Below are positions 2,449 through 30,879 of a DNA stretch of 64,000 nt, piece after piece. The stretch is from positions 1,736,001-1,800,000 of the forward strand of contig OZ296656.1 in the NCBI GenBank assembly GCA_965655095.1, written 5' to 3'. Source of the DNA: Haplodiscus bocki. Taxonomy: Eukaryota. The position numbers were made by a program, and so were the translations under genes. Position 1 is the first letter of the stretch, and each line of letters starts with the position of its first letter. The notes under the pieces were generated by a model that was given only the letters and a program-made list of their open reading frames with translations, made no database searches and was not told where the DNA came from.

Positions 2449-2505
2449 GATTTTTTCCATCCAACTTTCTTTTTCTGCATCAATTCTGGTGATTGGTCTG
2501 CAATT

Positions 2506-5884: not shown

Positions 5885-8800
5885 ATGCCATCTGGTAAGA
5901 GTGATTTTAAAAGACGTCGCTGTGCAAAATGTGGACGCTTCAGTGAACGTAATCACTCCTGTCCAAATAACACTGACAATGTTTCTTCTACTAGCGAACC
6001 ATTAGGAATTTTGTACAGCATACCTGACAGTAATTTGCTGGTCTCCTCTGTTGATACCCTGCACTTAGAATCAACGTTGGAAGCGATGGGACTGTCCTGT
6101 TCCCCAACAAGCGGCATAATTGTGAATAAAACTAACATTCGCCTCAGTTCTGTTCAACCCTCGCAGAGTCTTTCTATAACGGGTGATGGTAATTGTCTTT
6201 TCACTGCTCTGGGCGTAGCCGTCGGTTTATCTCATGAAAGTGGTCATGATTTGAGGAAACTTATTGTGAGTAACATGGACTCGGTGACTTTTCCGGAAAA
6301 CAGTTTGCAAACCTCAATCTATTCCGCTGAGTTCCCCAACCAGAACAAACTTCTCACCAGCCCAACTGTCAACCACTACCTGAAGACATCGCGAATGGCA
6401 GAAAATGGAGTTTTTGGCACTTGTGTGGAAATTTATACCTTTTGTCAAATTTTTAAATTGGACGTTTATGTATACCACAGTATTTTGAAAAGTTGGCTCG
6501 TTTACAAATGCGACTGCTCAAATGACAGACAAGGAGTTTTCATTCAACAAACGCGAACCAGAGATCACTTTGAGGTAATTAGTGGCTTGACCGAAACATA
6601 CCACACTTCATTACTCCTATCAGAAGATTTTGCTGGTTCGAGTAGTCAATGTGGAAATTCAGCAATGAATACTCAATGCCCCGGAATCCAGAAGACAGCA
6701 CTTGCAGCACTTGATGAAACTGAGCCCTTGCAGAAGCGCAGACGGACTTCAGATTATCCAGTCGCCAATTATTTGATCGAGAATGGAGAAATTAAAACAA
6801 CTTTGACAACTTTTTGTTTGGCCGAAGCTCTTTGTGCTGGAGGAAATACTACAACGCAAAGTAAAGGCCCTCCTCCAACTGCTCTGCAACATCGACAACA
6901 TCAATTTCACAGATTGCCTGGGGACGAGTTAACTGATGAGATTTTTTTGAAATTAACTGAAAACTTTGTACCATCATCGAAACTACCTGAAGAATCAACC
7001 GTTGAAATTGAGTCAAAATTGGTTGTGACAGATACCGTCAATGGCGCTGACATTTGTTGCAAGTGCATGCGGGAAGCCACGGTTTATTTTCCACTGGACA
7101 TTAAGGCCTACAGCAATGCTGGATTGGTTAATAGAAAGTTCGGTAGGAAGCTGAAAAACGAAGTTGTACATCTGTGTTGTTCCTGTTACAGCTATTGTAC
7201 TGCACCAAAGGTTGACTGGCAAATGGCTTGGCCAGCTGTTTTTTTCACGCTCCTTTCTGATACTTCCAAGACAGAAGCTTGTTTAGTCGCTATTTGCTCG
7301 TTGTTACCGCTGGAAATAAGGCAACATTGGCTGGGGGTAATAACCCTTTTCCCTATCTGCATCCAGTGTGTTTTAAATCGGCCGCGTATTCTTGGCACAT
7401 GTACTGTTGATGGAACACGGAGATTGGAACGTTTCGAGCAATTAATGAAAACAATGAGACAAAAAGAAATGGCTGAAGCTTTGGACTCTGAACCGTATCC
7501 AAACATACGTTGCCCTTTTGGTTGTTGGACGTTTATCGAAGATCCCGGGTACATACCAGCACAGCATTTTATAAACTTGATAGACAGAACTTTCACATCA
7601 TTCCAAGCGTCTGCATTCAAGAAACTCAGAGGCGCTAGACTCGACTTCCTGTGTCCTTTGATGTGCTTAGAGACGTTTCTAGTGGCTGCCACAGTGCGGT
7701 TACATGAGAAAGAAGGTTTGGTTGTGCAAACTTGTTCTGCGCATGACAGGGGATGTGCGTTACAGTTCTTGCATCCCCCCAGGCATCCGGAGCTGGGACG
7801 AATTCCAACTTTGTTTGAGGAACGATTAGCTATTGCATCACCTTCATTGTCGTGTGTGAGTAGCTTAAAGGCTAATTATGCTAGCCACACCTATCAACTG
7901 TTTCGGAGCGTTGGGTCTTATAGTGGTATGAGTACTGTTTCGTTGAGACGTAAACGGCGTTGGAACATCACTAGCAATCGTTTGTTCCAAGCTGAAAGAA
8001 CCGCCACGTTTTTCAGGTCAGATATTCCCATTTTAATTAGACAATGGGTTGTTCAAGGTAAAGTGATTGAAGATGTCGCCACTGATCTCTCTCAATATCA
8101 GCCGAAAAATGAAAAATTGATGGAGCATGTCGGCGTAGATCTTGACACCTGCATTCGATTGACGAAGGTGATGGACAAAAACGAACAAGAACTTTTGAGT
8201 AATGTGAAATTTCTACAGTGCTACGCTTTGGCTCAACCAAACAATGAACATGGTTGCTCACCTCCTCCTCTGATCAATGATACTGGAGATACACTCTGGT
8301 TTCTTCAAGCGGCATGCTGCATATCTCCAATTTTATGTTCATCCATGGTGTCTGGCGTTAATCACGTTTTGGCAAAAAATATGTTTTCACTGTTGCGTCA
8401 TACATTTGCTCGGTTTGGAAAAGAAAGCAAGTTGCAGCGTATTTCAGAAGCTCAAGCTGACATTGACAGTATATTGAATAACGCGGCAACTAACAATGAC
8501 AACCCAATCCTAATTTCAAACTTTTTGCAGGCGGGTGGCGTGGTGTTGCACGCATTATGTGCTGACTTATGCCATCTGCAGTTGAGCCAAAGAATAGAAT
8601 TGACTGAGAAAATTCTGCGCGACGTAAAAGTGGATACGAAACACGTGATTGCTACAACAACTGATGTAAACAATCTGAGGAACAAGGTCAACCCACCTCT
8701 CAACATCGTCCTATTTGATGTCCAATTTGAGCTTGTGGGATGTGGTTGCGGTTCTCGGGGTACAGATGCTGTAATTTTGCTTCGGCATGGTGGTCGCTTC

Positions 8801-11800
8801 TGCAATTTTTGGCGTATACTCAAAGCTAACAAGTTTGCTGAACCTTTGTTGGACTCACCTGAGACCTTAGTAGAAAAAATTCTACGAGGCTACTGGACGT
8901 TTTTAATCTACCGAGGAACTAACTCTAAAAAGGTGTCGACTGTAAAGTGGCACTATCTCAGTAATTTAACCGGCCAAGGAGTTTTCATTTGTGACAAACA
9001 TGATGTTCCGTTAACAAAGGACTTCCGACGTAGTAACTACTTCTGTCGATGTGGAAGGTCATCATTCCTCAGATGTGCCTACTCAAAGTGCAACAGTTGT
9101 GTGTGTAAGAAACACTTCGACGAGGGAATGAAACATCCGAACTTACGAGTTTTAGTTGCACCTCTAGCAGAACGAAAATTAACGCCTGAAGTACCGAACG
9201 CTGAAGCTGCAATCAATCCCACACAGTGTGAACTGAATTCCAACATAGCTAGTGTATGTGATGAGGACAAAAGCTTTGTTGAACCAGATTTATCCACCAA
9301 CTGTTTAAGTCAAAACTCAAGTTCATCGGTAGCTTCTTTTCTGTGCAACAACATGAACGCAAACTCGATCAGCGAAAGTCAATTGGCCATGAATAAATTG
9401 AACGTTTGTTCGGGTGAAAGGGCCATTGTTGCTGTACAAGAGGCTTCCAGAGAAGAAGATTACAATATTCCTCTCCACATACTGTTGAATTCACGATGCA
9501 ACTTACTGCACAGGAAAAGAAGTCATCCCATTTCCCTAACCGTTAAAGAGAAACGTTTTATGGAAAACATAACAGCTTCCTCAACATCATCAACGCCTTT
9601 GCTTCAACCGGAAGGGCTGCTTTTTCCTACTATTTTCTGGTCCCAAAGTTTCGATGGCAGCATTGAAGGTGCAATTCCAATATCCCTGTTCCAATCCGAA
9701 AAATACAACAAACAAGTGGGGTTTGCAGGTTTAGAAAACATGCTGCGAACTCGCATCACTGATGGGTCACTTTTAACCTCCAGTCACGCATCATATCTGC
9801 AGTTCGTTTTTGATTGTCTTCTTAATTTACAACTGAGTAAAACCGATATTCGGATTGTGTTGAACAGAGGCTGGCAGGAATTGGGCAGTAAGCCTACAAA
9901 TTACCAGTACTACTCCGCTGAAACTTTCAAGTTCGATTGTGAAGAATCCCGGAAAAATGTCTGTGAAGTAGCAGCACTTATTAGAGATAAAAACCCCACT
10001 TATTTTGTTACATACACATGTGGGCAATCTACTCACCCCGGCTTGCGCAAAATTTTCGAGGCTATTGACAAACTTTACCCGCCCGATATGACATCCAAAG
10101 AATTGAGATTATCTGTAATACAAAGTGAATTAATGCCTATGCTTAGATGTTGGCATCGCGCCTCACAGTATGTAATGCAATGGTTGAAGTGTTCGGCCGA
10201 GCAACCTCTGGGACCAGTCTCCCACTTATGGATGAGGTACGAGTGGCAAGATGAAACTTCGGCCTTTCCACACATCCATGCACTAGTGTGTACAGGAGAA
10301 AACAAGTTTGGTCCGGAAGTTCAATCCCGAGTCTGCTGTTCTAAAGAAACATTCATGGGCGCCTTGAACGATTGTTGTCCAGCGTTATCGGATAGCGAAC
10401 GGTTCCGGTTGGGAGAACTTTTCCAAAAATACCAACGGCACGATTGTGGCAAGGGCAAAAATAGATGTAAAAAGAAAACTGATTGGTTGGGAAAGCCAGT
10501 GTGTAGAGTACCTAAATATCCTGCATCCGTTGGGTTCTCTTACAAGCAAATACAACCTAATTACTCGGAAGAAACTTGGGACTTGTTGAGAGCCATGAAA
10601 TTGTCCTATATTGACCCTAACTCTTCAACAGACAAAGCTGAGGAAGAACTGAAAGCTGGAAAGCATCACTACCCTGCTGCTTACAACGAGCACATTTCAC
10701 CAACAAATGCAGCTTTGTTTGCCTTCACTGAAAGTAGTACGAACGTCCAAATTTGTGACGACGAAATGTGTTCACGCTACGTTGCAAAGTATGCTGCCGG
10801 CGTGGAAGGTCGGGCGTTCACAAAAATAGTAGCGTCTGCTGGTGAGGATGAAGTGAAAGTCCAAACGGAACCTATTGTGAACGAAAAAATAGCTGGTGTC
10901 CAAACCAGCGTTACCAAAAAACGTCGGGATGATGATAAACGGAAATCTGTAACAGGAAGAATTGTTAGCATAACTGAATGCTTGTGGTGGGCTTTGCAGT
11001 TGCCATACGTTTGCACAAACGTAGATTTCATTCATGTACCAACAGTTCCGAAAGAGTTCAGATCTGGAATAGTGATAGAAAAACAAATTGCGAGGACGAT
11101 GAACTTCAGTGCTGTTTTTGCCGAAGCTGTTCGAATTCGGAAAAACGTTTTGAAGCTTCCAAAACATCGACAATTAACAAGAAATCAAGAATTGTTGTTG
11201 GCAGATGTCGAAGCAAGTTCGATTACGCCTGACAAAGTGACTATTTTTGGCCTTAGACCACCGGAACTTTTGTTTGTCAGCAGTTTGAAAAGTTATTTTA
11301 GTTGGTTCGTTAGATTCAAAATCAACAGCTCGAAAGGGAAAAGTAGTCATGAGATTTTGTTGAGCCGTGCATCGTGTAATGACTTTTGGGTTGATTGTCT
11401 TGGATACGCTATCAAGATACGCCCACCCGCAATTTCTGATTTTCTTGATTTTTGTTCAACGAGAAGTGATAACCGGAGAGACGAAGTTTTGAAACAGGAG
11501 TGCCGCAAACATGTTCTCCCCAAATTGCAAGGAACCAACAGTTGCCCCAGACTGGTGGCGTACAATCATTGTTTTTCAGATCAAAAAGCCATAGTGGTTT
11601 TCACAAATACTCTACCCAGTAGTCCAACAAAGTTCTTGTTGCATTTTGTGCTAACTTTTGGTTCGTTTGACACCGAACTTGACATTCTCGCAGTTTCCTC
11701 TCTCAGGGAATCTTTTATAGCTGCCAAACTGGTGGAGCGTAACAACATTACTGTTGCAGTCGTGCTTCAACTAGCTCGCCGCTATCTATTGCAACAGCTC

Positions 11801-13984
11801 CGGTTTGTGCCGGGATCCTCTAAACTCATTGACAAGTTTTTGTTGATGGCAAATAGCGTTCTGGGAGAGGCACTGTTAGAAAACAACTTATATTTTGCAT
11901 CCGGGGTACCAGCTGTTTTGGATCGCACAATCTCTGCCGACTCCGAAGAAAATGTTGCTGTAGATTTGACAATCAGCAAGAGTAGATTGGTGGAGTTCTT
12001 ACACACATGTCAAACGGGACTTCCAAGCGAAGAAAGTATGATTGATGCTTCCCTAACTGCGCCCGTTGATTGGAAACCGGACTTTGGTAGACATCCTAGC
12101 CAAACAGTGACATCGTACTGTGAACAGAGTAAGATTTTGAAATATTTAGTTGAAATCGTGGACTTGTACAGAGGAGGAACACAAAATTTTGTGAGACATC
12201 AAATCATCGCTGGGGCACCAGGAACGGGAAAAACATTCATCATGTTGAGAGCTCTGAGTTATGCAATATGTCAAGGACTCAATTGCATGGTAACTTCACT
12301 AGCGGCCGAAAGGTCGGCTGCTTTAGGTGGCAAGCATCTAAATGCTCTCATTCCTTTCCCGGTGGAGAAAAATGGAACTGTTAATTCTTTGTCTCGAGTA
12401 GCTTTGTCCAGCTTGCAGAAATCACCGGACAGAAGTCGGTTTCTCCAAAACTTAGATGTATTGTTTGTTGAAGAAATTTCGATGATCTCTAGTGAACTTT
12501 GGGCTGCGACGGACCACGTTTTCCAAATCATCTGCTCAAACTACGTGCCATTCGCTGGCAAACTAATCATTGCAACCGGAGATTTTTTTCAACTCCCTCC
12601 ACCAAAAGGAAGTTGTCTGATCAGTTCTTCATTCCCTCTAACGACTTTTCATTTTAGTTTTCTCCAGCACTTTGTGCGTATGCAAAATGAAACGGGTCAA
12701 AAAGTTTTGTCACTGATGTCAACTTTTCCAAGAACAACTGCCATCGGAAACCAAATTTGGAGTTTGATTGAGCGAAATTGCAATTTCGTAGATTGCTGGG
12801 ATGACGTACCAAATGATACAATTCGAATTTTTGCTACTCGCAAAGCGGAAAGATATGCGACGTTCAAGAAAATTATTCAGGTGAAAGACAGTGGTTCCCA
12901 GTTCTATGAAAGTTCATCGACAGATGAAATGTGTGTGTCAAGTACGGACAACTGGATAGAAGCTTCTGGACCTGCAACAAAGTTTCTAAATAAGAAATGC
13001 TTGGAGTCACAATCATTGTTTCTGTTCCCCGGAGCAATTCTTCGACTCACCGTGAACAAGCCAAATGTGATGGCTTTCCAAGGACAACTGTGTGTTTTGG
13101 TTTCACTGGACTCGTTGGCTGACAACGGAACAGTAACTGTTGCCTTGGCCCCTGCTGGTTGCCGATCCATTCCACCACTCTCTGTAATACGAAGATCCTG
13201 GAGATGCATTGTTCTCGCAAAGGAAATCGGAGTTAACATTCGTCTAAACCACAGAACTATTTGTCGCAGAATCCAATTTCCCCTCAAATTGTACGTAGCG
13301 TCAACTATTCACAAAACTATGGGCGAAACACTCCCAACAGTTGCTACGCAGATTGTTGGAGCTCAAGAGTTTTCTCTTTGGCTGCCGGAGCAACTATACG
13401 TAGTAATGAGTCGTGTTCGATCACTGGCGGATATCACTTTCGTGGGATCGAAGCAGTCCAACGAAGGAGCCATCCTGAGTTTGTTGTGTAAAAAGTCACA
13501 GTGGTCGGAGCTGACTACCGAGATCCTCCAAAAGTGTTCTTCCCGTGACCCAACAATCTTCCATGGCTCTACAGACCCCTTTCCGTCAACCATCAGTATA
13601 CCGCAAGAGAATGTTGGCTACTGTTATGTTATTCAGAGCGTCCCACAAAACAACTTGTTATATATTGGTTCAACAATGTGCCTGAATCGACGAATTCGTG
13701 AACATAATGTTGGCTTGGGAGCTTCATTCACGCATGATCCCTCTCGAAGACCTTGGGTTTTGTGTGCTTACGTGACCGGCTTTCTTGCAAGCAGCTCCAC
13801 GGAGAGAATAAGGTTTTTTGAAAAACAGTGGCTTGGGGCAGTCACTAAAGTGCTTAACTTGAGGAAGAAGAACATCTCCCTCCCGAATGCATTGTCAGCA
13901 GCAGAAAACTTAATCATGAATTGGCCTCATAAAGAAGATGTCCTGAAGTTGGTAATTTGCTGTAATCAGCCCATATTGCATTAG
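5885..13984 (+). CDS. RepHel transposase-like protein: ZnF - OTU protease - Cys-rich regions - HUH Rep - PIF1-like SF1 helicase - GIY-YIG (SLX1-like) endonuclease
   Basis: ORF open from 5843 (GTG); first ATG at 5885 gives 2,699 aa. OTU: GDGNCLF (~6182), GVFGTCVEI, DHFEV (~6563). Rep motif 1 PTYFVTYTC (~9995), motif 2 YEWQDETSAFPHIHALV (HUH at 10271-10279), motif 3 YVAKY (10778-10792). Helicase: GAPGTGKT (~12212), FVEEISM, GDFFQLPP, QFPLKLYVASTIHKTMGETL, QLYVVMSRV. GIY-YIG: GYCYVIQS..LYIGST..RRIREHN..GASFT..RRPW..FFEKQW (~13616-13830). Confidence 0.95.
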   Translation: MPSGKSDFKRRRCAKCGRFSERNHSCPNNTDNVSSTSEPLGILYSIPDSNLLVSSVDTLHLESTLEAMGLSCSPTSGIIVNKTNIRLSSVQPSQSLSITGDGNCLFTALGVAVGLSHESGHDLRKLIVSNMDSVTFPENSLQTSIYSAEFPNQNKLLTSPTVNHYLKTSRMAENGVFGTCVEIYTFCQIFKLDVYVYHSILKSWLVYKCDCSNDRQGVFIQQTRTRDHFEVISGLTETYHTSLLLSEDFAGSSSQCGNSAMNTQCPGIQKTALAALDETEPLQKRRRTSDYPVANYLIENGEIKTTLTTFCLAEALCAGGNTTTQSKGPPPTALQHRQHQFHRLPGDELTDEIFLKLTENFVPSSKLPEESTVEIESKLVVTDTVNGADICCKCMREATVYFPLDIKAYSNAGLVNRKFGRKLKNEVVHLCCSCYSYCTAPKVDWQMAWPAVFFTLLSDTSKTEACLVAICSLLPLEIRQHWLGVITLFPICIQCVLNRPRILGTCTVDGTRRLERFEQLMKTMRQKEMAEALDSEPYPNIRCPFGCWTFIEDPGYIPAQHFINLIDRTFTSFQASAFKKLRGARLDFLCPLMCLETFLVAATVRLHEKEGLVVQTCSAHDRGCALQFLHPPRHPELGRIPTLFEERLAIASPSLSCVSSLKANYASHTYQLFRSVGSYSGMSTVSLRRKRRWNITSNRLFQAERTATFFRSDIPILIRQWVVQGKVIEDVATDLSQYQPKNEKLMEHVGVDLDTCIRLTKVMDKNEQELLSNVKFLQCYALAQPNNEHGCSPPPLINDTGDTLWFLQAACCISPILCSSMVSGVNHVLAKNMFSLLRHTFARFGKESKLQRISEAQADIDSILNNAATNNDNPILISNFLQAGGVVLHALCADLCHLQLSQRIELTEKILRDVKVDTKHVIATTTDVNNLRNKVNPPLNIVLFDVQFELVGCGCGSRGTDAVILLRHGGRFCNFWRILKANKFAEPLLDSPETLVEKILRGYWTFLIYRGTNSKKVSTVKWHYLSNLTGQGVFICDKHDVPLTKDFRRSNYFCRCGRSSFLRCAYSKCNSCVCKKHFDEGMKHPNLRVLVAPLAERKLTPEVPNAEAAINPTQCELNSNIASVCDEDKSFVEPDLSTNCLSQNSSSSVASFLCNNMNANSISESQLAMNKLNVCSGERAIVAVQEASREEDYNIPLHILLNSRCNLLHRKRSHPISLTVKEKRFMENITASSTSSTPLLQPEGLLFPTIFWSQSFDGSIEGAIPISLFQSEKYNKQVGFAGLENMLRTRITDGSLLTSSHASYLQFVFDCLLNLQLSKTDIRIVLNRGWQELGSKPTNYQYYSAETFKFDCEESRKNVCEVAALIRDKNPTYFVTYTCGQSTHPGLRKIFEAIDKLYPPDMTSKELRLSVIQSELMPMLRCWHRASQYVMQWLKCSAEQPLGPVSHLWMRYEWQDETSAFPHIHALVCTGENKFGPEVQSRVCCSKETFMGALNDCCPALSDSERFRLGELFQKYQRHDCGKGKNRCKKKTDWLGKPVCRVPKYPASVGFSYKQIQPNYSEETWDLLRAMKLSYIDPNSSTDKAEEELKAGKHHYPAAYNEHISPTNAALFAFTESSTNVQICDDEMCSRYVAKYAAGVEGRAFTKIVASAGEDEVKVQTEPIVNEKIAGVQTSVTKKRRDDDKRKSVTGRIVSITECLWWALQLPYVCTNVDFIHVPTVPKEFRSGIVIEKQIARTMNFSAVFAEAVRIRKNVLKLPKHRQLTRNQELLLADVEASSITPDKVTIFGLRPPELLFVSSLKSYFSWFVRFKINSSKGKSSHEILLSRASCNDFWVDCLGYAIKIRPPAISDFLDFCSTRSDNRRDEVLKQECRKHVLPKLQGTNSCPRLVAYNHCFSDQKAIVVFTNTLPSSPTKFLLHFVLTFGSFDTELDILAVSSLRESFIAAKLVERNNITVAVVLQLARRYLLQQLRFVPGSSKLIDKFLLMANSVLGEALLENNLYFASGVPAVLDRTISADSEENVAVDLTISKSRLVEFLHTCQTGLPSEESMIDASLTAPVDWKPDFGRHPSQTVTSYCEQSKILKYLVEIVDLYRGGTQNFVRHQIIAGAPGTGKTFIMLRALSYAICQGLNCMVTSLAAERSAALGGKHLNALIPFPVEKNGTVNSLSRVALSSLQKSPDRSRFLQNLDVLFVEEISMISSELWAATDHVFQIICSNYVPFAGKLIIATGDFFQLPPPKGSCLISSSFPLTTFHFSFLQHFVRMQNETGQKVLSLMSTFPRTTAIGNQIWSLIERNCNFVDCWDDVPNDTIRIFATRKAERYATFKKIIQVKDSGSQFYESSSTDEMCVSSTDNWIEASGPATKFLNKKCLESQSLFLFPGAILRLTVNKPNVMAFQGQLCVLVSLDSLADNGTVTVALAPAGCRSIPPLSVIRRSWRCIVLAKEIGVNIRLNHRTICRRIQFPLKLYVASTIHKTMGETLPTVATQIVGAQEFSLWLPEQLYVVMSRVRSLADITFVGSKQSNEGAILSLLCKKSQWSELTTEILQKCSSRDPTIFHGSTDPFPSTISIPQENVGYCYVIQSVPQNNLLYIGSTMCLNRRIREHNVGLGASFTHDPSRRPWVLCAYVTGFLASSSTERIRFFEKQWLGAVTKVLNLRKKNISLPNALSAAENLIMNWPHKEDVLKLVICCNQPILH

Positions 13985-15649: not shown

Positions 15650-16958
15650 TAAGTACAAGTAACAAAGCCTTACTGACGTAGTTGTTGATTAATGAACGCA
15701 GTTTCTAACATGGTACCATGTTTTTGATTTTTTGGTAATCGCGTGTTTGCTCTCTTTCTTCTATGTTTCCTTTAAAGTATCAACGTTCACCGGAAAGTTG
15801 TCGTAATGTGGCCGACAAAATTGTGAACAATTGTAATTGTTTAATGGCCATTGTTTTAACAGAGCGTCGCAGAATACGTACACCTGCTCATCGTCGACTG
15901 GGGTTCTGAAAGCAATCACATTCTGTTCCAGCTGAAAAAGAGATAAAAGTGTGGTATTACGCCTCGACGACCAATGTTATGAAGGCTTCCTTCCGTATAT
16001 TCGATACACCAGTTTTATCATGCAGCAAACAAATAGGAGTTATTGGTTATTTTACTGTGCATACAATTGGAATCGACTGTAAAGTTATCTGAGTGTTTAG
16101 ATCTTGTAAGTTCCGAACAAAATTAAATGATTTTTTCGAATAAATGTCAGTTCAACCTATAAAACCCTTGAATTTGTCACTTTGCGTTGTTTCTTCCTGT
16201 ATGTTAGTTTCCTTCAGTCACGTTTTTCCATAGACTTTGAGTACTGCTAAACCCATGAATGTTGCTCTTTGTTCGGCGCTGTTTTTATGCCTGTTAATTT
16301 TCATTGCTAATTGAACTGCTTATTGAAATAAAGCATTACCAGATTGCTTCCCCTGAAATAACGTTTTATGTAACTTAGATTCAACTTCATTTGTTGAAGT
16401 CAAGAAACTGCCGATTGTTTTATTTCTCTTGAATTGCTATCATTGTCTGTGCACTGATTTGTTTAATTTTGAAAAGGTTTTCTTTCGTGTTAGAGTGGTT
16501 TTCACGAAAGAGAAATTTTTATCCTGAATTAACACGTTTCAATTCCCTATAGTCTTTTCATTTACATTCACAGCCGTTAATGATGCGTGAAAGTTCGTTG
16601 AAAAATGTAATTGTGAGCAAACATAAACGTCATTCACTGATGACTGAACTTTGAAACTGTTGACACGTGAAAAAAAGTTGAAAGAAGTCAGTTCCGCCTT
16701 TTGCGTGGCATCACGTAAAGGAACATGTAACTTTTTTCAATAGAAAACTAGCAAGAAGTTTTTTATCAAACCTTTTAATGTATACTAGCGATTCTCACTG
16801 TGACGTGGAAAATTACTGAAGTTGTATTTGATCATGTTGAACTTCATCTTCCTTGTTTTAATTTTTGAGAGTAATTAGTTCTGCGTCCTGAATAGGTTGA
16901 CGAAATGTCACTGTGTAAACCGCGTTGTATAAGATGATGCTTGAAAAGATTGTTCCAG

Positions 16959-17972
16959 ATGATGACCACCCGTGTAAATACGGCCCAAATAACTGCTCCC
17001 AATTTCTTGCGCAACAGTGAGAACACATATATCCGAGGTGTTGTTTTGGTTTTTAAAAAATTTGATCGTCCCCTACAGTTATTTCGACCGCAAGCTGTAA
17101 AAGCTAAACGAATGAGCCCTGACACAAACTACGATCGCCTAATCATCATCGGCGAAATCGAAACGCGAGAATGTTTTGCAATAATAGCAGATTCTGCGCA
17201 GAAAAGTTCACTCCTTTTTGCTGACCGAAAACTAACTATTGGTGCCATCGTTGATGTGAAAGAAGCTATTTTTTCCAACTCCTGCCTTGGTAACGATCGA
17301 ACTAATCCAATTTTTAATGTGTCTCTTCCTTTAGAGGTAGTTACAGACGACCCGCCAATGGAGCCTATTCCTATCGATTTGAATCCCTCGACGAGTGCAA
17401 TGTTTCACTTCTGTCTCCCAAACCGACCCCTTTCGTTTTTGCACGCAATTCCTGTGTTTCCGACTTGTTCCGGTTTTTTGTGCGACAGAAGAAATAGAAA
17501 AAACGAAAGCATTTGCGCATGTTTGCAAAAATCGACTTTGTCAGCGTGGGTCATGTCAGCAAGGGTAATTAGTCAGGACATATTGAGCGAAGACGATGAT
17601 CCTCTAACAGGGGATGTTCTGCAAAGTTTGTCATTGACCAAACTTTTTTGTGAGGAGGCTATCATTAGATCGGCATACACATCAATTGACAGGGGACTTT
17701 TGAGAGACGCTGTCATGCGTGTTGCTAACCATGTTAATAGCAATGGTGGGTGGAGAGTGTCAGGCTTCTATAAAACTGCTTTAACAGAAGAAAACATTGC
17801 GCAAAATGTTCAAAGGGTAAGAATTTGTCGAATCACTCCAGCGATTGAGATCCCTGTGCACTTGAAATACAATGTGATTCCTTGGATTGGAGACAATACA
17901 AACCAGCCACCACGCCTTCTTCACGCTAACGCAAATTTGCCAGCAACTAACAATGTAAACAACATGAGATGA
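16959..17972 (+). CDS. Hypothetical protein (~337 aa), possible N-terminal OB fold and central Cys cluster
   Basis: A 1-kb ORF in AT-rich DNA (called from TTG at 16941; first ATG at 16959, directly after TTCCAG). Beta-strand-like pattern IRGVVL..RLIIIGE..CFAII..LTIGAIVDVKEA..PIFNV, then CSGFLCDRRNRKNESICAC. The function is inferred only. Confidence 0.8.
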   Translation: MMTTRVNTAQITAPNFLRNSENTYIRGVVLVFKKFDRPLQLFRPQAVKAKRMSPDTNYDRLIIIGEIETRECFAIIADSAQKSSLLFADRKLTIGAIVDVKEAIFSNSCLGNDRTNPIFNVSLPLEVVTDDPPMEPIPIDLNPSTSAMFHFCLPNRPLSFLHAIPVFPTCSGFLCDRRNRKNESICACLQKSTLSAWVMSARVISQDILSEDDDPLTGDVLQSLSLTKLFCEEAIIRSAYTSIDRGLLRDAVMRVANHVNSNGGWRVSGFYKTALTEENIAQNVQRVRICRITPAIEIPVHLKYNVIPWIGDNTNQPPRLLHANANLPATNNVNNMR

Positions 17973-18684: not shown

Positions 18685-19300
18685 CAATTAGAAAAACTGA
18701 CTTTTTTAGCAGGTTTTTCTTTTTTCTTCGACAAAAAATCGTCATAACCGTCATTATTTTCGGCAATTTGGCCAAAACATTTTTTCGCTGCAAAATTATT
18801 TTTCTTTTGATACAGGTCCCGTCACGTTGTGACGAATGCTCACATCACTTTTTTAACATCAACCTGGGAGAAATGACAAAATGCTCGATTTTGGCCTCTT
18901 TTTGACAAATTTGAAAGGTCATATCTCCTAGGGCAAAAGGCCCTGGCCAAAAATTTTTGGCATGTAGGTAGTTAACAGCAAATGTGCTTCACACAAAAAA
19001 TTTGGGTCCAATGCTATGGGTAAAGTGTGGAGATAATGCGGGAAAAACATCGAAACCTGCCAAAAAACAGGATCATTGCGTCATATCTCCCCAACCAAAA
19101 GAAAAAAAATGATGTAAGTGCCAAAAATCTTCATACATCGGCGGACTCTATCCACATGCAAAGTTTCATCAAAATCGTATGGTTAGGTTTCGAGATCGTC
19201 TCCTTTTCGGCGGGTTGAGTGTAAGTGTAAACTTGATTTTTGAAACTCGGCACAGGGGCCCCTCCCCCGCCTCGTAACAGTTTTGTGTCGCTAAAAAGCT
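18685..19300 (+). repeat. Subterminal non-coding region, variant B (also at 35580-36195 and 52475-53090)
   Basis: Same motif order and spacing as variants A and A'. Confidence 0.85.
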
Positions 19301-19343
19301 TGACCACCCAGTGGAGGCAACGGTGCAATTTACTAGAGGGCGG
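19254..19343 (+). other. Junction signal 2 (core 19301-19319)
   Basis: AGGGGCCCCTCCCCCGCCTCG followed by TGACCACCCAGTGGAGGCA. Confidence 0.9.
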
Positions 19344-22300
19344 GATTTTTTCCATCCAACTTTCTTTTTCTGCATCAATTCTGGTGATTGGTCTGCAATT
19401 CTAAATTAAATTGTTGTTGTTATAAACTGGAAACTGTGGTTTGTTCTTTTTTACGAATCCTTTCTCCAGGCTCAAGATTAGCTCGCACAACGCAGATTCA
19501 ACTGCTTTGTGCACGGTTTGTTTCACACCGTAAATGTAGCTATGTTCTGCAAAACCTATGAAAGTTTCTTTTTTCTTTTGAAATTCGTGACAGCAGCAAC
19601 GAAGGATGGCAAACGTACTTTCCGATCGACTTTTTCCCGAAGTCAGCTCACAACGGTGAAGTAACAAATTCTCCATTTTATCAGCTGCAGAATTAAACTA
19701 TAACTACACAGACCTACCCCTGACCGGCTTCCATATCAATGGACGTCTTCAGTGGAGCTCCTTTCCATTCATTGAATCCAGATTTTTTGAAGAAATCATT
19801 TGTTTGCGCAATGAGATGTTCCCGAAGCATTTTTTGCTGTTTCTGGTTGCCTTTCTTTGTGCTTCAGAGGAACAAAATAGGTGTTATGTGCTATTGCAAA
19901 TCAGTTTAATTTTTTTGAAACATGAAATTGTACATTTAGGAGTTCTGTACTAGAAAAATTCAACAATAGGAAGTTCTGCGCCAAAACCTTTCATCCAATA
20001 TGTAACTATAATATTCATATCTCGTCCAAAACATATATAGACCGTTTCATGCTTCCGGAAAATAACCAGATGAGAAAAAGTTACTGGCCACATTCATCAT
20101 TGAATTGAGACAGTTGTTTTCATCAAATTATCGTAAACCAAGTATTATGACAACATGATGACCAACTTGATGACGGATCAGTACTATGAAGTCGATTGAA
20201 TATGTACCTTTCATTTATCAAGTCGTAAAAGTGGTATTTTCATTCTCTACATTTTCAGCTTTTGTCAACATAAAACTTGGTTAATGGAAGCACTTTTAAC
20301 AATATCTGAAGGTTACGTGTACAGTTAAAACGCTGCCCCTTCACTCTTGATGTCTTTTTTGAGTGTTTCCGGTTTTAAAGACTTTTTTTCTTTTACATAC
20401 TGTTCAAAAGTGGTCGCGTTTTTCACAACCACTTTTATCGGAGTTTTTCGAAAGATCATATTTGATTGGTTCTGACGCATAGATATCGGAGTTTTACACT
20501 TTTTCAAATTAACTTTGAAATGTTGTGTGAAAAAATCTTGTCGTTGTCAGAAAAAATTATCCGCGAACGAGCGATTTATGGGTGTGTTTTATTCCAAGAA
20601 GTCTTGACGAAGTTAGTTTTTGGATAGTGAATTTTTATATCAAATCATAAATTCTTTAAGGTCAGCTCCACATTGCCAATTTCTCATCCCTCATTGGAAC
20701 CCTCTGAAGTAGACAGTTTTGGTATGTGATTCGATCGTTTGAACTCTTCATCCTGTGAATCCTGACTCACTGAAGTCTCAACTGATAATGGTCGACATCT
20801 TTTGATCGCTGTCGATAAATTGTGCTATTTGTTTCGGGTGATTTACTTTACTGACGTTTTTTTGGACGAACAATGCTGGATAATGCTTGTAGAATCGTTG
20901 ACTGACTACTAAGTATTGTTCCAAAATTTCCAATTTACAAGGGGAACTCCACTGTTATCAGCGTACATGAATTGTTATTGTGTTTGATGGAGCATGAGAC
21001 GCGGGAAAAATTTGAAAAGTATACAACATAATCGTAACTTTAAAATCATCCCGATTGATGCCAAAGATGATTGCCGTTGAACGAACAGTGTCAACGGGCT
21101 CCTCAAAGCTGAGCGTGTCAATGGTTTTGCTCCGGAAGAGAAATTGTTTCCATTTATTTTTTACCCGTCTACTGCCTAGAAGCTACAAAGTGTTTACGTG
21201 CAAGTTCGCAGACTCACATTACCTATAGTTTTCTAACAAACTTGACAGTTTGTGCTTCATTTCATCGTGTTTTTACTGATATTGAAAGTTCTTCATGTTT
21301 GTGTTGCCTGTGGGTTTCGTTCTTTTTTCCATGTGTTCAACCATTCAATCGGATTTACCATTTTTGGAAGGAAATTCAGGACCGAATGATCAAAACTGAG
21401 ATCATATTATCGTTAGTTTTGACCACAAAAAATTTGTTTTCCCAACGAAACTGTTTGGATTCGCACGTGTTTTGTAGAGATGTTAGCGAAAAAACATTGC
21501 GTGTGGAAAAAAATTATTGACGAAAACTACTGCTTGAACGTTCATAGCAAACTGTGTGTTATCTTTGGCGTTGAAGTACCACGCGTCTGACTGTGCATCA
21601 ACTTTGAGACGCACTTGTAAGCAAACGATTTCTGATTTTGTTCTTTAATTGTTCAAATGAAACTTTGACGAGTTAAAAGTGTAATCATGATTTTTCGCGG
21701 GGAGAAGACTGCCCCTCCTTTTTCTTGTTTCAAAGTTTCAAAAATCCAATCTCTTCTGTGCGATCATGAAATTGAATTTTTTATTTTTAGCAAGTTACAT
21801 AATCGCCGTCGATATTATAGATCTAAATTTTATTGATCAACCGCTGCTGCAAGCATTTGTTTTGTCAGCTGACTCACTTGGTTCTGACAGCTTCCATAAC
21901 CTCCGTTCCATGGAATGATTTTGGATGCCAGGGTTTTCTGAAGAGAGTGACAGGATTGTGAGAATCTTTCAATCATAGTTACCTAAGTTGTTAGGTTTTT
22001 GGGTTTTTTACAGGAAGATTTTTTTTCCGGAGGGAATTTTCACCTGTTGTCAGACTTCAGTCATAAACTATAGGGCGTAATTTCAGTTTGCCTGATTTAG
22101 TAGTTGGCTCTGGGAAAAACTTTATTTTTACTCCCTTTCTCTCCTGCTCATTTTTCATGATATGTTATTTTAAGTTAACTAAAGTGATAAAGTGCGCATT
22201 TTCTCAAACAGCTTAGGGAATTCGTATAGGTCGCCTCAACACTCATGCGTTCTCAATTGATTTTTCCAACTCAACATTCTTGGCTTTTAAGAACGATTGT

Positions 22301-28700: not shown

Positions 28701-30879
28701 TGTGCCGGGATCCTCTAAACTCATTGACAAGTTTTTGTTGATGGCAAATAGCGTTCTGGGAGAGGCACTGTTAGAAAACAACTTATATTTTGCATCCGGG
28801 GTACCAGCTGTTTTGGATCGCACAATCTCTGCCGACTCCGAAGAAAATGTTGCTGTAGATTTGACAATCAGCAAGAGTAGATTGGTGGAGTTCTTACACA
28901 CATGTCAAACGGGACTTCCAAGCGAAGAAAGTATGATTGATGCTTCCCTAACTGCGCCCGTTGATTGGAAACCGGACTTTGGTAGACATCCTAGCCAAAC
29001 AGTGACATCGTACTGTGAACAGAGTAAGATTTTGAAATATTTAGTTGAAATCGTGGACTTGTACAGAGGAGGAACACAAAATTTTGTGAGACATCAAATC
29101 ATCGCTGGGGCACCAGGAACGGGAAAAACATTCATCATGTTGAGAGCTCTGAGTTATGCAATATGTCAAGGACTCAATTGCATGGTAACTTCACTAGCGG
29201 CCGAAAGGTCGGCTGCTTTAGGTGGCAAGCATCTAAATGCTCTCATTCCTTTCCCGGTGGAGAAAAATGGAACTGTTAATTCTTTGTCTCGAGTAGCTTT
29301 GTCCAGCTTGCAGAAATCACCGGACAGAAGTCGGTTTCTCCAAAACTTAGATGTATTGTTTGTTGAAGAAATTTCGATGATCTCTAGTGAACTTTGGGCT
29401 GCGACGGACCACGTTTTCCAAATCATCTGCTCAAACTACGTGCCATTCGCTGGCAAACTAATCATTGCAACCGGAGATTTTTTTCAACTCCCTCCACCAA
29501 AAGGAAGTTGTCTGATCAGTTCTTCATTCCCTCTAACGACTTTTCATTTTAGTTTTCTCCAGCACTTTGTGCGTATGCAAAATGAAACGGGTCAAAAAGT
29601 TTTGTCACTGATGTCAACTTTTCCAAGAACAACTGCCATCGGAAACCAAATTTGGAGTTTGATTGAGCGAAATTGCAATTTCGTAGATTGCTGGGATGAC
29701 GTACCAAATGATACAATTCGAATTTTTGCTACTCGCAAAGCGGAAAGATATGCGACGTTCAAGAAAATTATTCAGGTGAAAGACAGTGGTTCCCAGTTCT
29801 ATGAAAGTTCATCGACAGATGAAATGTGTGTGTCAAGTACGGACAACTGGATAGAAGCTTCTGGACCTGCAACAAAGTTTCTAAATAAGAAATGCTTGGA
29901 GTCACAATCATTGTTTCTGTTCCCCGGAGCAATTCTTCGACTCACCGTGAACAAGCCAAATGTGATGGCTTTCCAAGGACAACTGTGTGTTTTGGTTTCA
30001 CTGGACTCGTTGGCTGACAACGGAACAGTAACTGTTGCCTTGGCCCCTGCTGGTTGCCGATCCATTCCACCACTCTCTGTAATACGAAGATCCTGGAGAT
30101 GCATTGTTCTCGCAAAGGAAATCGGAGTTAACATTCGTCTAAACCACAGAACTATTTGTCGCAGAATCCAATTTCCCCTCAAATTGTACGTAGCGTCAAC
30201 TATTCACAAAACTATGGGCGAAACACTCCCAACAGTTGCTACGCAGATTGTTGGAGCTCAAGAGTTTTCTCTTTGGCTGCCGGAGCAACTATACGTAGTA
30301 ATGAGTCGTGTTCGATCACTGGCGGATATCACTTTCGTGGGATCGAAGCAGTCCAACGAAGGAGCCATCCTGAGTTTGTTGTGTAAAAAGTCACAGTGGT
30401 CGGAGCTGACTACCGAGATCCTCCAAAAGTGTTCTTCCCGTGACCCAACAATCTTCCATGGCTCTACAGACCCCTTTCCGTCAACCATCAGTATACCGCA
30501 AGAGAATGTTGGCTACTGTTATGTTATTCAGAGCGTCCCACAAAACAACTTGTTATATATTGGTTCAACAATGTGCCTGAATCGACGAATTCGTGAACAT
30601 AATGTTGGCTTGGGAGCTTCATTCACGCATGATCCCTCTCGAAGACCTTGGGTTTTGTGTGCTTACGTGACCGGCTTTCTTGCAAGCAGCTCCACGGAGA
30701 GAATAAGGTTTTTTGAAAAACAGTGGCTTGGGGCAGTCACTAAAGTGCTTAACTTGAGGAAGAAGAACATCTCCCTCCCGAATGCATTGTCAGCAGCAGA
30801 AAACTTAATCATGAATTGGCCTCATAAAGAAGATGTCCTGAAGTTGGTAATTTGCTGTAATCAGCCCATATTGCATTAG
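22780..30879 (+). CDS. RepHel-GIY-YIG protein, copy 2
   Basis: Same motifs as copy 1; differs by S34T and P1611L (numbered from the 2713-aa ORF start). Confidence 0.95.
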   Translation: MPSGKSDFKRRRCAKCGRFTERNHSCPNNTDNVSSTSEPLGILYSIPDSNLLVSSVDTLHLESTLEAMGLSCSPTSGIIVNKTNIRLSSVQPSQSLSITGDGNCLFTALGVAVGLSHESGHDLRKLIVSNMDSVTFPENSLQTSIYSAEFPNQNKLLTSPTVNHYLKTSRMAENGVFGTCVEIYTFCQIFKLDVYVYHSILKSWLVYKCDCSNDRQGVFIQQTRTRDHFEVISGLTETYHTSLLLSEDFAGSSSQCGNSAMNTQCPGIQKTALAALDETEPLQKRRRTSDYPVANYLIENGEIKTTLTTFCLAEALCAGGNTTTQSKGPPPTALQHRQHQFHRLPGDELTDEIFLKLTENFVPSSKLPEESTVEIESKLVVTDTVNGADICCKCMREATVYFPLDIKAYSNAGLVNRKFGRKLKNEVVHLCCSCYSYCTAPKVDWQMAWPAVFFTLLSDTSKTEACLVAICSLLPLEIRQHWLGVITLFPICIQCVLNRPRILGTCTVDGTRRLERFEQLMKTMRQKEMAEALDSEPYPNIRCPFGCWTFIEDPGYIPAQHFINLIDRTFTSFQASAFKKLRGARLDFLCPLMCLETFLVAATVRLHEKEGLVVQTCSAHDRGCALQFLHPPRHPELGRIPTLFEERLAIASPSLSCVSSLKANYASHTYQLFRSVGSYSGMSTVSLRRKRRWNITSNRLFQAERTATFFRSDIPILIRQWVVQGKVIEDVATDLSQYQPKNEKLMEHVGVDLDTCIRLTKVMDKNEQELLSNVKFLQCYALAQPNNEHGCSPPPLINDTGDTLWFLQAACCISPILCSSMVSGVNHVLAKNMFSLLRHTFARFGKESKLQRISEAQADIDSILNNAATNNDNPILISNFLQAGGVVLHALCADLCHLQLSQRIELTEKILRDVKVDTKHVIATTTDVNNLRNKVNPPLNIVLFDVQFELVGCGCGSRGTDAVILLRHGGRFCNFWRILKANKFAEPLLDSPETLVEKILRGYWTFLIYRGTNSKKVSTVKWHYLSNLTGQGVFICDKHDVPLTKDFRRSNYFCRCGRSSFLRCAYSKCNSCVCKKHFDEGMKHPNLRVLVAPLAERKLTPEVPNAEAAINPTQCELNSNIASVCDEDKSFVEPDLSTNCLSQNSSSSVASFLCNNMNANSISESQLAMNKLNVCSGERAIVAVQEASREEDYNIPLHILLNSRCNLLHRKRSHPISLTVKEKRFMENITASSTSSTPLLQPEGLLFPTIFWSQSFDGSIEGAIPISLFQSEKYNKQVGFAGLENMLRTRITDGSLLTSSHASYLQFVFDCLLNLQLSKTDIRIVLNRGWQELGSKPTNYQYYSAETFKFDCEESRKNVCEVAALIRDKNPTYFVTYTCGQSTHPGLRKIFEAIDKLYPPDMTSKELRLSVIQSELMPMLRCWHRASQYVMQWLKCSAEQPLGPVSHLWMRYEWQDETSAFPHIHALVCTGENKFGPEVQSRVCCSKETFMGALNDCCPALSDSERFRLGELFQKYQRHDCGKGKNRCKKKTDWLGKPVCRVPKYPASVGFSYKQIQPNYSEETWDLLRAMKLSYIDPNSSTDKAEEELKAGKHHYLAAYNEHISPTNAALFAFTESSTNVQICDDEMCSRYVAKYAAGVEGRAFTKIVASAGEDEVKVQTEPIVNEKIAGVQTSVTKKRRDDDKRKSVTGRIVSITECLWWALQLPYVCTNVDFIHVPTVPKEFRSGIVIEKQIARTMNFSAVFAEAVRIRKNVLKLPKHRQLTRNQELLLADVEASSITPDKVTIFGLRPPELLFVSSLKSYFSWFVRFKINSSKGKSSHEILLSRASCNDFWVDCLGYAIKIRPPAISDFLDFCSTRSDNRRDEVLKQECRKHVLPKLQGTNSCPRLVAYNHCFSDQKAIVVFTNTLPSSPTKFLLHFVLTFGSFDTELDILAVSSLRESFIAAKLVERNNITVAVVLQLARRYLLQQLRFVPGSSKLIDKFLLMANSVLGEALLENNLYFASGVPAVLDRTISADSEENVAVDLTISKSRLVEFLHTCQTGLPSEESMIDASLTAPVDWKPDFGRHPSQTVTSYCEQSKILKYLVEIVDLYRGGTQNFVRHQIIAGAPGTGKTFIMLRALSYAICQGLNCMVTSLAAERSAALGGKHLNALIPFPVEKNGTVNSLSRVALSSLQKSPDRSRFLQNLDVLFVEEISMISSELWAATDHVFQIICSNYVPFAGKLIIATGDFFQLPPPKGSCLISSSFPLTTFHFSFLQHFVRMQNETGQKVLSLMSTFPRTTAIGNQIWSLIERNCNFVDCWDDVPNDTIRIFATRKAERYATFKKIIQVKDSGSQFYESSSTDEMCVSSTDNWIEASGPATKFLNKKCLESQSLFLFPGAILRLTVNKPNVMAFQGQLCVLVSLDSLADNGTVTVALAPAGCRSIPPLSVIRRSWRCIVLAKEIGVNIRLNHRTICRRIQFPLKLYVASTIHKTMGETLPTVATQIVGAQEFSLWLPEQLYVVMSRVRSLADITFVGSKQSNEGAILSLLCKKSQWSELTTEILQKCSSRDPTIFHGSTDPFPSTISIPQENVGYCYVIQSVPQNNLLYIGSTMCLNRRIREHNVGLGASFTHDPSRRPWVLCAYVTGFLASSSTERIRFFEKQWLGAVTKVLNLRKKNISLPNALSAAENLIMNWPHKEDVLKLVICCNQPILH

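What the first reader, a model, noticed from the sequence alone, without database searches (positions are those of the whole stretch)
13610..13984. SLX1-like GIY-YIG nuclease fused to the C-terminus of RepHel
Seen: GYCYVIQS..LYIGST..RRIREHN..GASFT..RRPW..VTGF..FFEKQW, in frame after helicase motif VI, with the expected Tyr, Arg and Glu residues present. Known: this motif series resembles SLX1-type GIY-YIG domains, which cut branched DNA. OTU-bearing Helentrons typically carry an apurinic (APE) endonuclease at this position, and GIY-YIG is better known from Penelope-like retroelements and homing endonucleases. Inference: the nuclease was swapped in independently, and may resolve flap or Holliday intermediates during integration or nick the target. 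I do not recall this architecture being described but cannot exclude it.
Basis: partly seen in the sequence, partly recalled or inferred. Interest (0 to 1): 0.85.

Follow-up and report, generated by a model that had tools for sequence, protein, structure and literature searches.

The report
Helitron transposase with SLX1-like GIY-YIG nuclease
A giant rolling-circle transposon gene ends in a real, conserved SLX1-type GIY-YIG DNA-cutting domain where classic Helentrons carry an AP endonuclease, and this marks a large, old and barely described branch of Helitron-like elements.

Summary
Window 13616-13957 encodes a GIY-YIG domain (Pfam 41.9 bits, cut-off 22.6). It lies in frame at the C-terminus of a 2713-codon OTU-Rep(HUH)-PIF1 open frame that occurs three times in a 16,895-bp tandem array. 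Its best solved relatives, by sequence and by predicted fold, are all SLX1 nucleases, but the SLX1 RING finger is absent.

This is not a one-off capture. All of the 150 closest domain relatives that are long enough have the helicase directly upstream. The catalytic Tyr, Tyr, Arg, His, Asn and Glu are kept in 94-99% of 175 family sequences. dN/dS is 0.09-0.20, like Rep and Hel. On a RepHel tree the GIY-YIG carriers form one clade (SH-aLRT 100), apart from the AP-endonuclease Helentrons, which also live in this genome.

The genome holds at least 127 copies in several subfamilies, many of them intact. The diverged fourth copy also carries the domain, just beyond base 64000.

One paper (HELIANO, 2024) mentions a GIY-YIG in a single moss HLE2 family, so this is a new variant of a known kind.

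That the domain acts as the element's duplex or branched-DNA nickase is inference. The scan's first readers noted the same architecture on two other pieces of this genome.

The parts
5885..13984 (+). RepHel transposase gene, copy 1 (frame open from 5843; first ATG at 5885; stop TAG at 13982-13984). Domain order is OTU, Rep(HUH), PIF1 helicase, GIY-YIG.
6182..6580 (+). OTU-like cysteine protease region, with the DGNCLF Cys motif at 6185-6211 and DHFEVI at 6563-6580.
   Evidence: Pfam OTU 22.4 bits, just under the cut-off of 23.3; motifs located
9971..10801 (+). Rep (HUH) nuclease domain, with the H-I-H motif in FPHIHALVC at 10265-10291 and the two-tyrosine motif RYVAKYAAG at 10775-10801.
   Evidence: Pfam Helitron_like_N 27.2 bits, residues 1377-1482; motifs located
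12122..13522 (+). PIF1-like SF1B helicase, with Walker A GAPGTGKTF at 12212-12238 and the last helicase motif at 13394-13423.
   Evidence: Pfam PIF1 E 9.3e-12
13616..13981 (+). SLX1-like GIY-YIG nuclease domain of copy 1 (residues 2592-2713). Predicted catalytic residues are Y2595, Y2607, R2617, H2621, N2622 and E2660.
30511..30876 (+). The same GIY-YIG domain in tandem copy 2 (ORF 22738-30879).
47406..47771 (+). The same GIY-YIG domain in tandem copy 3 (ORF 39633-47774).
16941..17972 (+). Second conserved gene of the element (343 codons, no Pfam match). It is 61% and 40% identical to ORFs lying beside the RepHel genes of two diverged family members.
19245..19345 (.). Head-to-tail junction 'core' between units. 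It also occurs near 2350-2450, 36140-36240 and 53035-53135. It holds a GGGGCCCC palindrome and a CCACCCAGTGG mini-hairpin, and is shared with the flanking diverged elements.
57316..64000 (+). Fourth, diverged and broken RepHel copy (frames of 425, 410, 993 and 238 codons). Its complete GIY-YIG domain lies just past the window end, at genome C9:1800426-1801358.

Best explanation
Shown: the stretch encodes a catalytically complete GIY-YIG nuclease domain of the SLX1/URI type. It is permanently fused to the C-terminus of the OTU-Rep(HUH)-PIF1 transposase of a Helitron-like rolling-circle transposon. The domain was present at the base of a large, old RepHel clade that is distinct from the AP-endonuclease Helentrons. 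It has been kept under purifying selection as strong as that on Rep and Hel, so it is a working part of the transposition machinery and not cargo. Inferred: it supplies the DNA-cutting activity that the HUH domain lacks, because HUH cuts single-stranded DNA only. It would nick duplex or branched DNA, either at the target or at the element's own hairpin- and palindrome-bearing ends. That would create the 3'-OH or single-stranded entry point for the helicase, for Rep strand transfer and for new-strand synthesis. This would be the same job the APE domain is thought to do in canonical Helentrons, and it parallels APE in LINEs versus GIY-YIG in Penelope elements. Because the SLX1 RING finger (which docks SLX4 and autoinhibits) is missing, control would come from the RepHel body and not from SLX4. 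My odds: identity, fusion, ancient origin and selection about 0.9; nickase role about 0.45, with structure-specific processing of intermediates the main alternative.
For: Domain call: Pfam PF01541 at 41.9 bits against a cut-off of 22.6. The best PDB sequence hits are all SLX1. The AlphaFold2 core has pLDDT above 90, and the top 11 Foldseek PDB hits are SLX1 or HIGLE at probability 1.00. Fusion: a single open frame. More than 30 full-length relatives of 2270-3100 aa have PIF1 followed by GIY-YIG. An independent coral-metagenome contig of 961 nt spans the helicase-to-domain junction. Family-wide: 496 cluster representatives match the domain at E <= 1e-3, and every one of the best 150 that is long enough has the helicase C-terminus directly upstream. 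Catalytic residues across 175 sequences: Tyr 173, Tyr 172, Arg 167, His 171, Asn 165, and Glu 160 of 163 ungapped. Selection: dN/dS of the domain is 0.15, 0.09 and 0.17-0.20 in three subfamily comparisons, against Rep 0.05-0.19, Hel 0.06-0.16 and the OTU region 0.18-0.60. Phylogeny: the GIY-YIG clade and the APE clade each have SH-aLRT 100, with a 2.05 stem, and the nuclease label maps onto the clades. Same position as APE: zebrafish Helentron Exo_endo_phos at about residues 2134-2320 of 2334, and this genome's own Helentron L016 at 1999-2194 of 2203.
Against: No biochemical or expression data exist; no RNA run was on record. Canonical Helitrons (HLE1) transpose with no extra nuclease, so a second nuclease is not strictly needed for rolling-circle transposition. 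Some nested lineages (P0012, P0024, and probably P0026, whose tail was not compared) keep the domain but have lost the YIG, Arg and His residues. Catalysis is therefore dispensable in some lineages, or those lineages are dying or are served in trans. SLX1 alone is autoinhibited and needs SLX4, and how a RING-less version is controlled is unknown. The element's true termini and target site could not be resolved from the tandem junctions, so no cleavage site can be proposed.
Confidence: 0.8

Rival explanations
1. The domain is a structure-specific processing nuclease and not a target nickase. Like SLX1, it would cut 5' flaps, forks, hairpins or four-way junctions that arise during rolling-circle transposition. 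Examples are trimming the displaced strand, cutting the hairpin or cruciform formed by the palindromic junction core, or resolving concatemers. Its activity or failure could shape the head-to-tail arrays.
For: The closest solved relatives are SLX1 enzymes crystallised with branched or 5'-flap DNA (6sei, 7cq4). The unit junctions carry a GGGGCCCC palindrome and a short hairpin. Elements sit in long head-to-tail arrays of 15-17 kb units.
Against: Sister Helentrons carry an APE, which is a plain nickase and not a structure-specific enzyme, at the same position. That argues for a generic nicking role. Substrate preference cannot be read from sequence.
Confidence: 0.3
2. The domain is passenger cargo: a fragment of a host SLX1 gene captured by a Helitron, translated by chance and irrelevant to transposition.
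For: Helitron-like elements capture host gene fragments often. HELIANO describes the Sphagnum GIY-YIG as 'captured'. The domain is closest to eukaryotic SLX1.
Against: dN/dS is 0.09-0.20, equal to Rep and Hel. The catalytic residues are kept in 94-99% of 175 diverged sequences. The position is fixed in a clade whose RepHel has diverged to about 30% identity. All nearest relatives of the domain are helicase-fused, not host SLX1.
Confidence: 0.04
3. The nuclease acts like a homing endonuclease. It would cut the conserved junction core of resident elements so that incoming copies integrate next to or into existing arrays.
For: Different subfamilies (100, 95, 65 and 48% identity) lie interleaved at 15-17 kb spacing in the same arrays on several chromosomes. 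All share the same junction core. Many GIY-YIG enzymes are homing endonucleases (general knowledge).
Against: The Rep HUH domain itself recognises element ends, so it could explain end-to-end insertion without a second nuclease. The fold is SLX1-like and not I-TevI-like. No DNA-binding or recognition module follows the catalytic core; the tail is 47 residues.
Confidence: 0.1

Closest known systems
Helentrons (HLE2 elements encoding Rep-Hel-AP endonuclease, often with OTU; Poulter 2003; Thomas & Pritham 2015, as cited in PMC11417382 and PMC6431247)
   Same: Both have one giant ORF in the order OTU-like protease, HUH Rep with two tyrosines, PIF1-like helicase, then a nuclease at the extreme C-terminus. 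Both form head-to-tail arrays. A canonical example (L016: DUF6570-OTU-Rep-PIF1-APE) lives in this same genome.
   Different: The nuclease is GIY-YIG and not Exo_endo_phos. There is no DUF6570 hit. Rep matches Pfam Helitron_like_N only weakly and partially (27-43 bits, against about 115-120 bits for the APE Helentrons). RepHel forms a separate clade with a very long stem.
HelenSM92, an HLE2 family of Sphagnum magellanicum reported by HELIANO (PMC11417382)
   Same: It is an HLE2-type element reported to carry a GIY-YIG domain besides RepHel. It is the only literature precedent found.
   Different: It is described in one sentence as a captured domain in one moss family. No SLX1 assignment, position, conservation, selection or clade-wide distribution is given. 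Its sequence and supplementary figure were not available here, so homology with this clade is untested.
SLX1 structure-specific endonuclease (PDB 4xlg, 6sei, 7cq2-4; plant homologue HIGLE, 7wme)
   Same: SLX1 is the best sequence and fold match to the nuclease core. The GIY, YIG, Arg, His-Asn, RPW and Glu motifs align. The match extends over about 120-134 residues, including the helical extension.
   Different: There is no C-terminal RING/PHD finger and so no recognisable SLX4-binding or autoinhibition module. It is not a stand-alone host repair gene. Identity to SLX1 is only 21-30%.
GIY-YIG endonuclease of Penelope-like retroelements
   Same: Both are mobile elements that use a C-terminal GIY-YIG nuclease where related elements use an APE. 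That gives the same APE versus GIY-YIG dichotomy.
   Different: This element has no reverse transcriptase. It has a different transposition chemistry (HUH rolling circle). The domain here is SLX1-like and is not closest to the UvrC or I-TevI type.

Membership tests
GIY-YIG nuclease superfamily (Pfam PF01541) | Profile match above the curated threshold | tested here: met
   41.9 bits against a cut-off of 22.6, E 1.2e-10
GIY-YIG nuclease superfamily (Pfam PF01541) | Catalytic motifs: Tyr of GIY, Tyr-x-Gly of YIG, Arg, His/Asn, Glu | tested here: met
   Y2595, Y2607-I-G2609, R2617, H2621, N2622 and E2660 are present. They are invariant in 11 homologues and kept in 94-99% of 175 sequences.
GIY-YIG nuclease superfamily (Pfam PF01541) | Beta-beta-alpha-beta-alpha core fold | tested here: met
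   The AlphaFold2 model has strands at 74-80, 87-92 and 119-126 with helices between them, and pLDDT above 90. It matches solved GIY-YIG domains.
SLX1 (structure-specific endonuclease subunit) | Nuclease domain of the SLX1/URI subtype | tested here: met
   The top PDB hits by sequence and the top 11 by fold are SLX1 or HIGLE
SLX1 (structure-specific endonuclease subunit) | C-terminal RING/PHD-type zinc finger that binds SLX4 | tested here: not met
   Only 47 residues follow the core, with 2 Cys and 2 His and no Pfam hit
SLX1 (structure-specific endonuclease subunit) | Activity on 5' flaps, forks and Holliday junctions, dependent on SLX4 | not testable with these tools
   Needs biochemistry
Helitron-like elements (RepHel rolling-circle transposons) | HUH motif and two-tyrosine motif in Rep, upstream of a PIF1-like helicase in one protein | tested here: met
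   H-I-H at residues 1477-1479, Y1646 and Y1650, Walker A at 2124-2132, Pfam PIF1 E 9e-12
Helentron sensu stricto (HLE2 with AP endonuclease) | C-terminal apurinic/apyrimidinic (Exo_endo_phos) endonuclease | tested here: not met
   No PF03372 hit in the 2713-residue frame or in the six plus-strand ORFs of 77-343 aa that were scanned in the unit. It is present in the reference Helentrons.
Helentron sensu stricto (HLE2 with AP endonuclease) | RepHel falls inside the Helentron clade | tested here: not met
   A separate clade with SH-aLRT 100 and a stem of 2.05 substitutions per site. Only one HLE1 sequence and no Helitron2 sequence were available, so its position relative to HLE2 as a whole is open.
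HLE2 (Helitron2/Helentron group) | Short asymmetric terminal inverted repeats, hairpins at the ends, insertion between T and T | tested here: inconclusive
   Only head-to-tail junctions were seen. A palindrome and a mini-hairpin lie in the junction core, but the exact ends and the target site cannot be read.
Penelope-like retroelements | Reverse transcriptase joined to GIY-YIG | tested here: not met
   No RT domain in the ORF

The most novel reading that the evidence does not exclude
The GIY-YIG carriers are a third deep lineage of eukaryotic Helitron-like elements and not a side branch of HLE2. They would be present from cnidarian-type animals to diatoms and perhaps mosses. Their transposition would depend on a structure-specific SLX1-type nuclease acting on the palindromic junction core. 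That dependence would explain why different subfamilies pile up head-to-tail in the same 15-17 kb-period arrays.
Probability: 0.2. Interest if true: 0.75.

Novelty: new variant of a known kind. Interest (0 to 1): 0.55.

Why it matters
Textbook accounts of Helitron-like elements list RPA, OTU and an AP endonuclease as the accessory domains. They split HLE2 into forms with that endonuclease (Helentron) and forms without it (Helitron2).

This finding shows a whole clade that recruited a different nuclease fold to the same C-terminal position and has kept it under strong selection. That makes two independent solutions to one problem, as with APE in LINEs and GIY-YIG in Penelope elements. It argues that a second, non-HUH nuclease does real work in HLE2-type transposition.

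It also gives a compact, RING-less SLX1-type nuclease that must act without SLX4. That is of interest for SLX1 regulation, and possibly as a fused helicase-nickase module.

Practically, annotation pipelines that look for Rep, Hel and APE will misclassify these abundant 17-kb elements. This genome holds at least 127 copies.

Tried and rejected
1. Supplementary files of the HELIANO paper, wanted in order to compare the Sphagnum HelenSM92 GIY-YIG, are not held. Homology with that family is therefore untested.

2. Literature searches for Helitron or Helentron with GIY-YIG, SLX1, PIF1 or rolling-circle found only the HELIANO sentence. Fanzor, Penelope and Terminon papers mention GIY-YIG in other elements.

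3. Host identity: run and organism names are coded. The only lead is that a 'coral metagenome' run carries a copy about 95% identical. No RNA run was on record, so expression is unknown.

4. An AlphaFold2 model of the conserved 343-codon second ORF failed (mean pLDDT 30.5 with 3 sequences), so no fold search was made. Pfam gave nothing for it.

5. The 'GIY-less' relatives P0012, P0024 and P0026 were first read as losses of the domain. hhalign shows that the tails of P0024 and P0012 are degenerate GIY-YIG domains (probability 94% and 91%). The P0026 tail had no Pfam hit and was not compared by hhalign. P0011, P0021, P0023 and P0025 simply end at or shortly after the helicase.

6. Assembly artefact was rejected. 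The fused frame is found in independent ENA, JGI and Logan assemblies and in contigs of another study.

7. Rooting: only one HLE1 sequence (two frames joined with X) and no Helitron2 or prokaryotic outgroup were to hand. The trees therefore show two nuclease-specific clades but not their order of origin. Both trees used the 'quick' method (SH-aLRT only).

8. The first fetch of the 95% copy took the wrong side of a minus-strand hit (L004) and was repeated as L012.
Full report
**What is at the coordinates.** The motifs lie at residues 2592-2663 of a frame that is open from 5843 to 13984 (2713 codons; first ATG at 5885). Pfam finds four domains in this one frame:
- an OTU-like protease (residues 114-213; 22.4 bits, just under the cut-off, but with the DGNCLF motif);
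- Helitron_like_N (1377-1482);
- a PIF1 helicase (2094-2253, E 9e-12);
- GIY-YIG (2592-2666).

Scanned alone, the last 144 residues score 41.9 bits against a curated cut-off of 22.6 (E 1.2e-10). Rep has an H-I-H motif (1477-1479) and a YxxxY motif (1646, 1650). The helicase has Walker A at 2124-2132.

**Which kind of GIY-YIG.**
- By sequence, the five best solved-structure hits are all SLX1 (4xlg E 5e-7; 7cq2; 6seh; 7cq4; plant SLX1 homologue 7wme). Bacterial UPF0213/YhbQ proteins come next.
- An AlphaFold2 model built on 11 homologues has pLDDT above 90 over the nuclease core.
- Foldseek against the PDB returns SLX1 or HIGLE chains as ranks 1-11 (E 3e-6 to 8e-5, probability 1.00, 121-134 aligned columns). 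UPF0213, UvrC and I-TevI appear only at E > 0.1.

'SLX1-like' is thus supported by two lines of evidence. It is not an SLX1 orthologue. Only 47 residues follow the core, with two Cys and two His and no Pfam hit, so the RING finger through which SLX1 binds SLX4 is absent.

**It is a fixed part of a large family, not a local accident.**
- A word-indexed search with the C-terminal 314 residues found full-length proteins of 2614-2853 aa, 29-65% identical, annotated Helitron_like_N + PIF1 + GIY-YIG.
- A search with the Rep-Hel part found more, down to 32% identity.
- An exhaustive phmmer search of the 154-residue domain against 1.84 billion cluster representatives gave 496 hits at E <= 1e-3 and 66 at E <= 1e-10.
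- I scored the best 150 against pieces of the window protein. Every one long enough to show upstream sequence has the helicase C-terminus directly before the domain, and the domain lies at or near the C-terminus.
- One lineage (P0105/P0181) adds a Ulp1 protease after it.
- Some JGI/IMG records auto-name these proteins 'predicted GIY-YIG superfamily endonuclease'.
- The ESM Atlas holds PIF1 + GIY-YIG clusters whose few taxon labels are eukaryotic, most often diatoms.

**Conservation and selection.** The catalytic positions are invariant in an 11-sequence alignment. Across 175 family sequences the counts are Tyr(GIY) 173, Tyr(YIG) 172, Gly 172, Arg2617 167, His2621 171, Asn2622 165, and Glu2660 160 of 163 ungapped.

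I took intact copies from the window's own genome and computed Nei-Gojobori dN/dS by region:

| Region | dN/dS |
|---|---|
| GIY-YIG, window vs the 95% subfamily | 0.15 |
| GIY-YIG, between two 65%-type subfamilies | 0.09 |
| GIY-YIG, within the 48%-type subfamily | 0.17-0.20 |
| Rep | 0.05-0.19 |
| Hel | 0.06-0.16 |
| N-terminal OTU region | 0.18-0.60 |

The nuclease is therefore as constrained as the core transposase domains.

**Relation to AP-endonuclease Helentrons.**
- The zebrafish Helentron P0029 and about 100 fish relatives carry Exo_endo_phos after PIF1.
- This genome also holds a canonical Helentron (L016: DUF6570-OTU-Rep-PIF1-APE, 2203 aa), a UCH-bearing one (L017) and an HLE1 Helitron (L019).
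- No APE is found in the window ORF or in the six other plus-strand ORFs of 77-343 aa that were scanned in the unit.
- ML trees of the Rep-Hel region (IQ-TREE, LG+C20, quick search) put all APE carriers in one clade (SH-aLRT 100). All GIY-YIG carriers fall in another (SH-aLRT 100, stem 2.05 substitutions per site), and GIY-YIG is present in every sub-clade.
- The few 'GIY-less' rows are nested inside the GIY-YIG clade. They are either truncated proteins or, for P0012 and P0024, degenerate domains that hhalign still recognises (probability 91-94%) but that have lost the YIG, Arg and His residues.

The simplest reading is one old acquisition at the base of the clade, independent of the APE acquisition, with later decay in a few lineages. 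Rooting and the position relative to Helitron2 remain open.

**Genomic setting.**
- The window holds three head-to-tail units of 16,895 bp, with boundaries near 2395, 19290, 36185 and 53080. Copies 2 and 3 differ at 7 positions.
- The units are flanked by diverged elements that share a junction core containing a GGGGCCCC palindrome and a CCACCCAGTGG mini-hairpin.
It does. Genome C9:1800426-1801358 encodes a complete domain with all motifs, in a 569-codon frame, although the gene is broken upstream.
- Genome-wide there are at least 127 matches to the C-terminal 314 residues, at about 100, 95, 65 and 48% identity. Many lie in open frames of 2684-2780 codons.
- The matches cluster in arrays with 15-17 kb spacing in which subfamilies are interleaved.
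- Contigs of a separate 'coral metagenome' study carry a copy about 95% identical across the helicase-nuclease junction. This also hints that the host is a coral or something living with one.

**Mechanism (inference).** HUH nucleases cut single-stranded DNA only. Two unrelated nucleases that leave 3'-OH nicks (APE and GIY-YIG) have been fixed at the same C-terminal place in sister RepHel clades. The same pair of folds serves as the target nickase in LINEs and Penelope elements.

I therefore think the domain most likely nicks duplex or branched DNA, at the target or at the element's structured ends. That would open DNA for the helicase and Rep and provide a primer end (about 0.45). The SLX1-like fold and the palindromic junction core make structure-specific processing of flaps, hairpins or concatemer junctions the main alternative (about 0.3). 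A homing-type cut of resident cores (about 0.1) and pure cargo (under 0.05) are less likely. None of this is tested.

**Novelty.** Reviews and recent surveys list RPA, OTU and APE as the accessory domains, and define Helentrons by the APE. The only precedent found is one sentence in HELIANO (PMC11417382) reporting a captured GIY-YIG domain in the Sphagnum HLE2 family HelenSM92. The clade-wide distribution, the SLX1 affinity, the selection and the separation from APE Helentrons are not described there.

I rate this a new variant of a known kind, of moderate interest. First readers of this scan noted the same architecture on two other pieces of this genome. Those notes are unchecked and are not counted as evidence.

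Noticed in passing
window 2395-53080; genome C3:133.76-134.31 Mb, C4:117.5-117.8 Mb, C11:74.9-75.1 Mb, C9:18.6-18.98 Mb, C23:0.1-0.31 Mb: The elements form long head-to-tail arrays with 15-17 kb spacing. Subfamilies of 100, 95, 65 and 48% identity are interleaved in them, several near contig ends. This suggests end-to-end insertion at a shared site, or rolling-circle concatemers.
   Followed up: partly
window 2350-2450, 19245-19345, 36140-36240, 53035-53135: A conserved junction core (GGGGCCCC palindrome, then TGACCACCCAGTGGAGGCA) is shared by the identical units and by the diverged neighbours on both sides. The switch between subfamilies falls inside it.
   Followed up: partly
window 16941-17972 (also 33836-34867 and 50731-51762): A 343-codon second ORF has no Pfam hit but is 61% and 40% identical to ORFs next to the RepHel genes in L001 and L002. 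It carries a Cys-rich CSGFLCDRR...CAC motif. The AlphaFold2 model failed (pLDDT 30).
   Followed up: partly
P0012, P0024, P0026 (metagenome proteins): In nested lineages the C-terminal domain is still recognisable by profile comparison (P0012 and P0024 were tested; P0026 is the sister of P0024 on the tree) but has lost the YIG, Arg and His catalytic residues. These are possible pseudo-nucleases or decaying lineages.
   Followed up: partly
L003:2118-11423 (P0181, 3101 aa): One lineage carries a Ulp1-type Peptidase_C48 domain after the GIY-YIG domain, so the nuclease is internal there.
   Followed up: no
L016 (C1:147366000-147375000), L017 (C6:63143000-63152500), L019 (C3:17409000-17418000), L020 (C1:21163000-21172000): The same genome also holds a canonical DUF6570-OTU-Rep-PIF1-APE Helentron, a UCH-bearing Helentron with the APE in a shifted frame, an HLE1 Helitron, and a further 2369-aa GIY-YIG lineage.
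   Followed up: partly
fish Helentrons P0227, P0229, P0239: Some vertebrate Helentron proteins carry a GDSL/SGNH lipase domain (PF13472).
   Followed up: no
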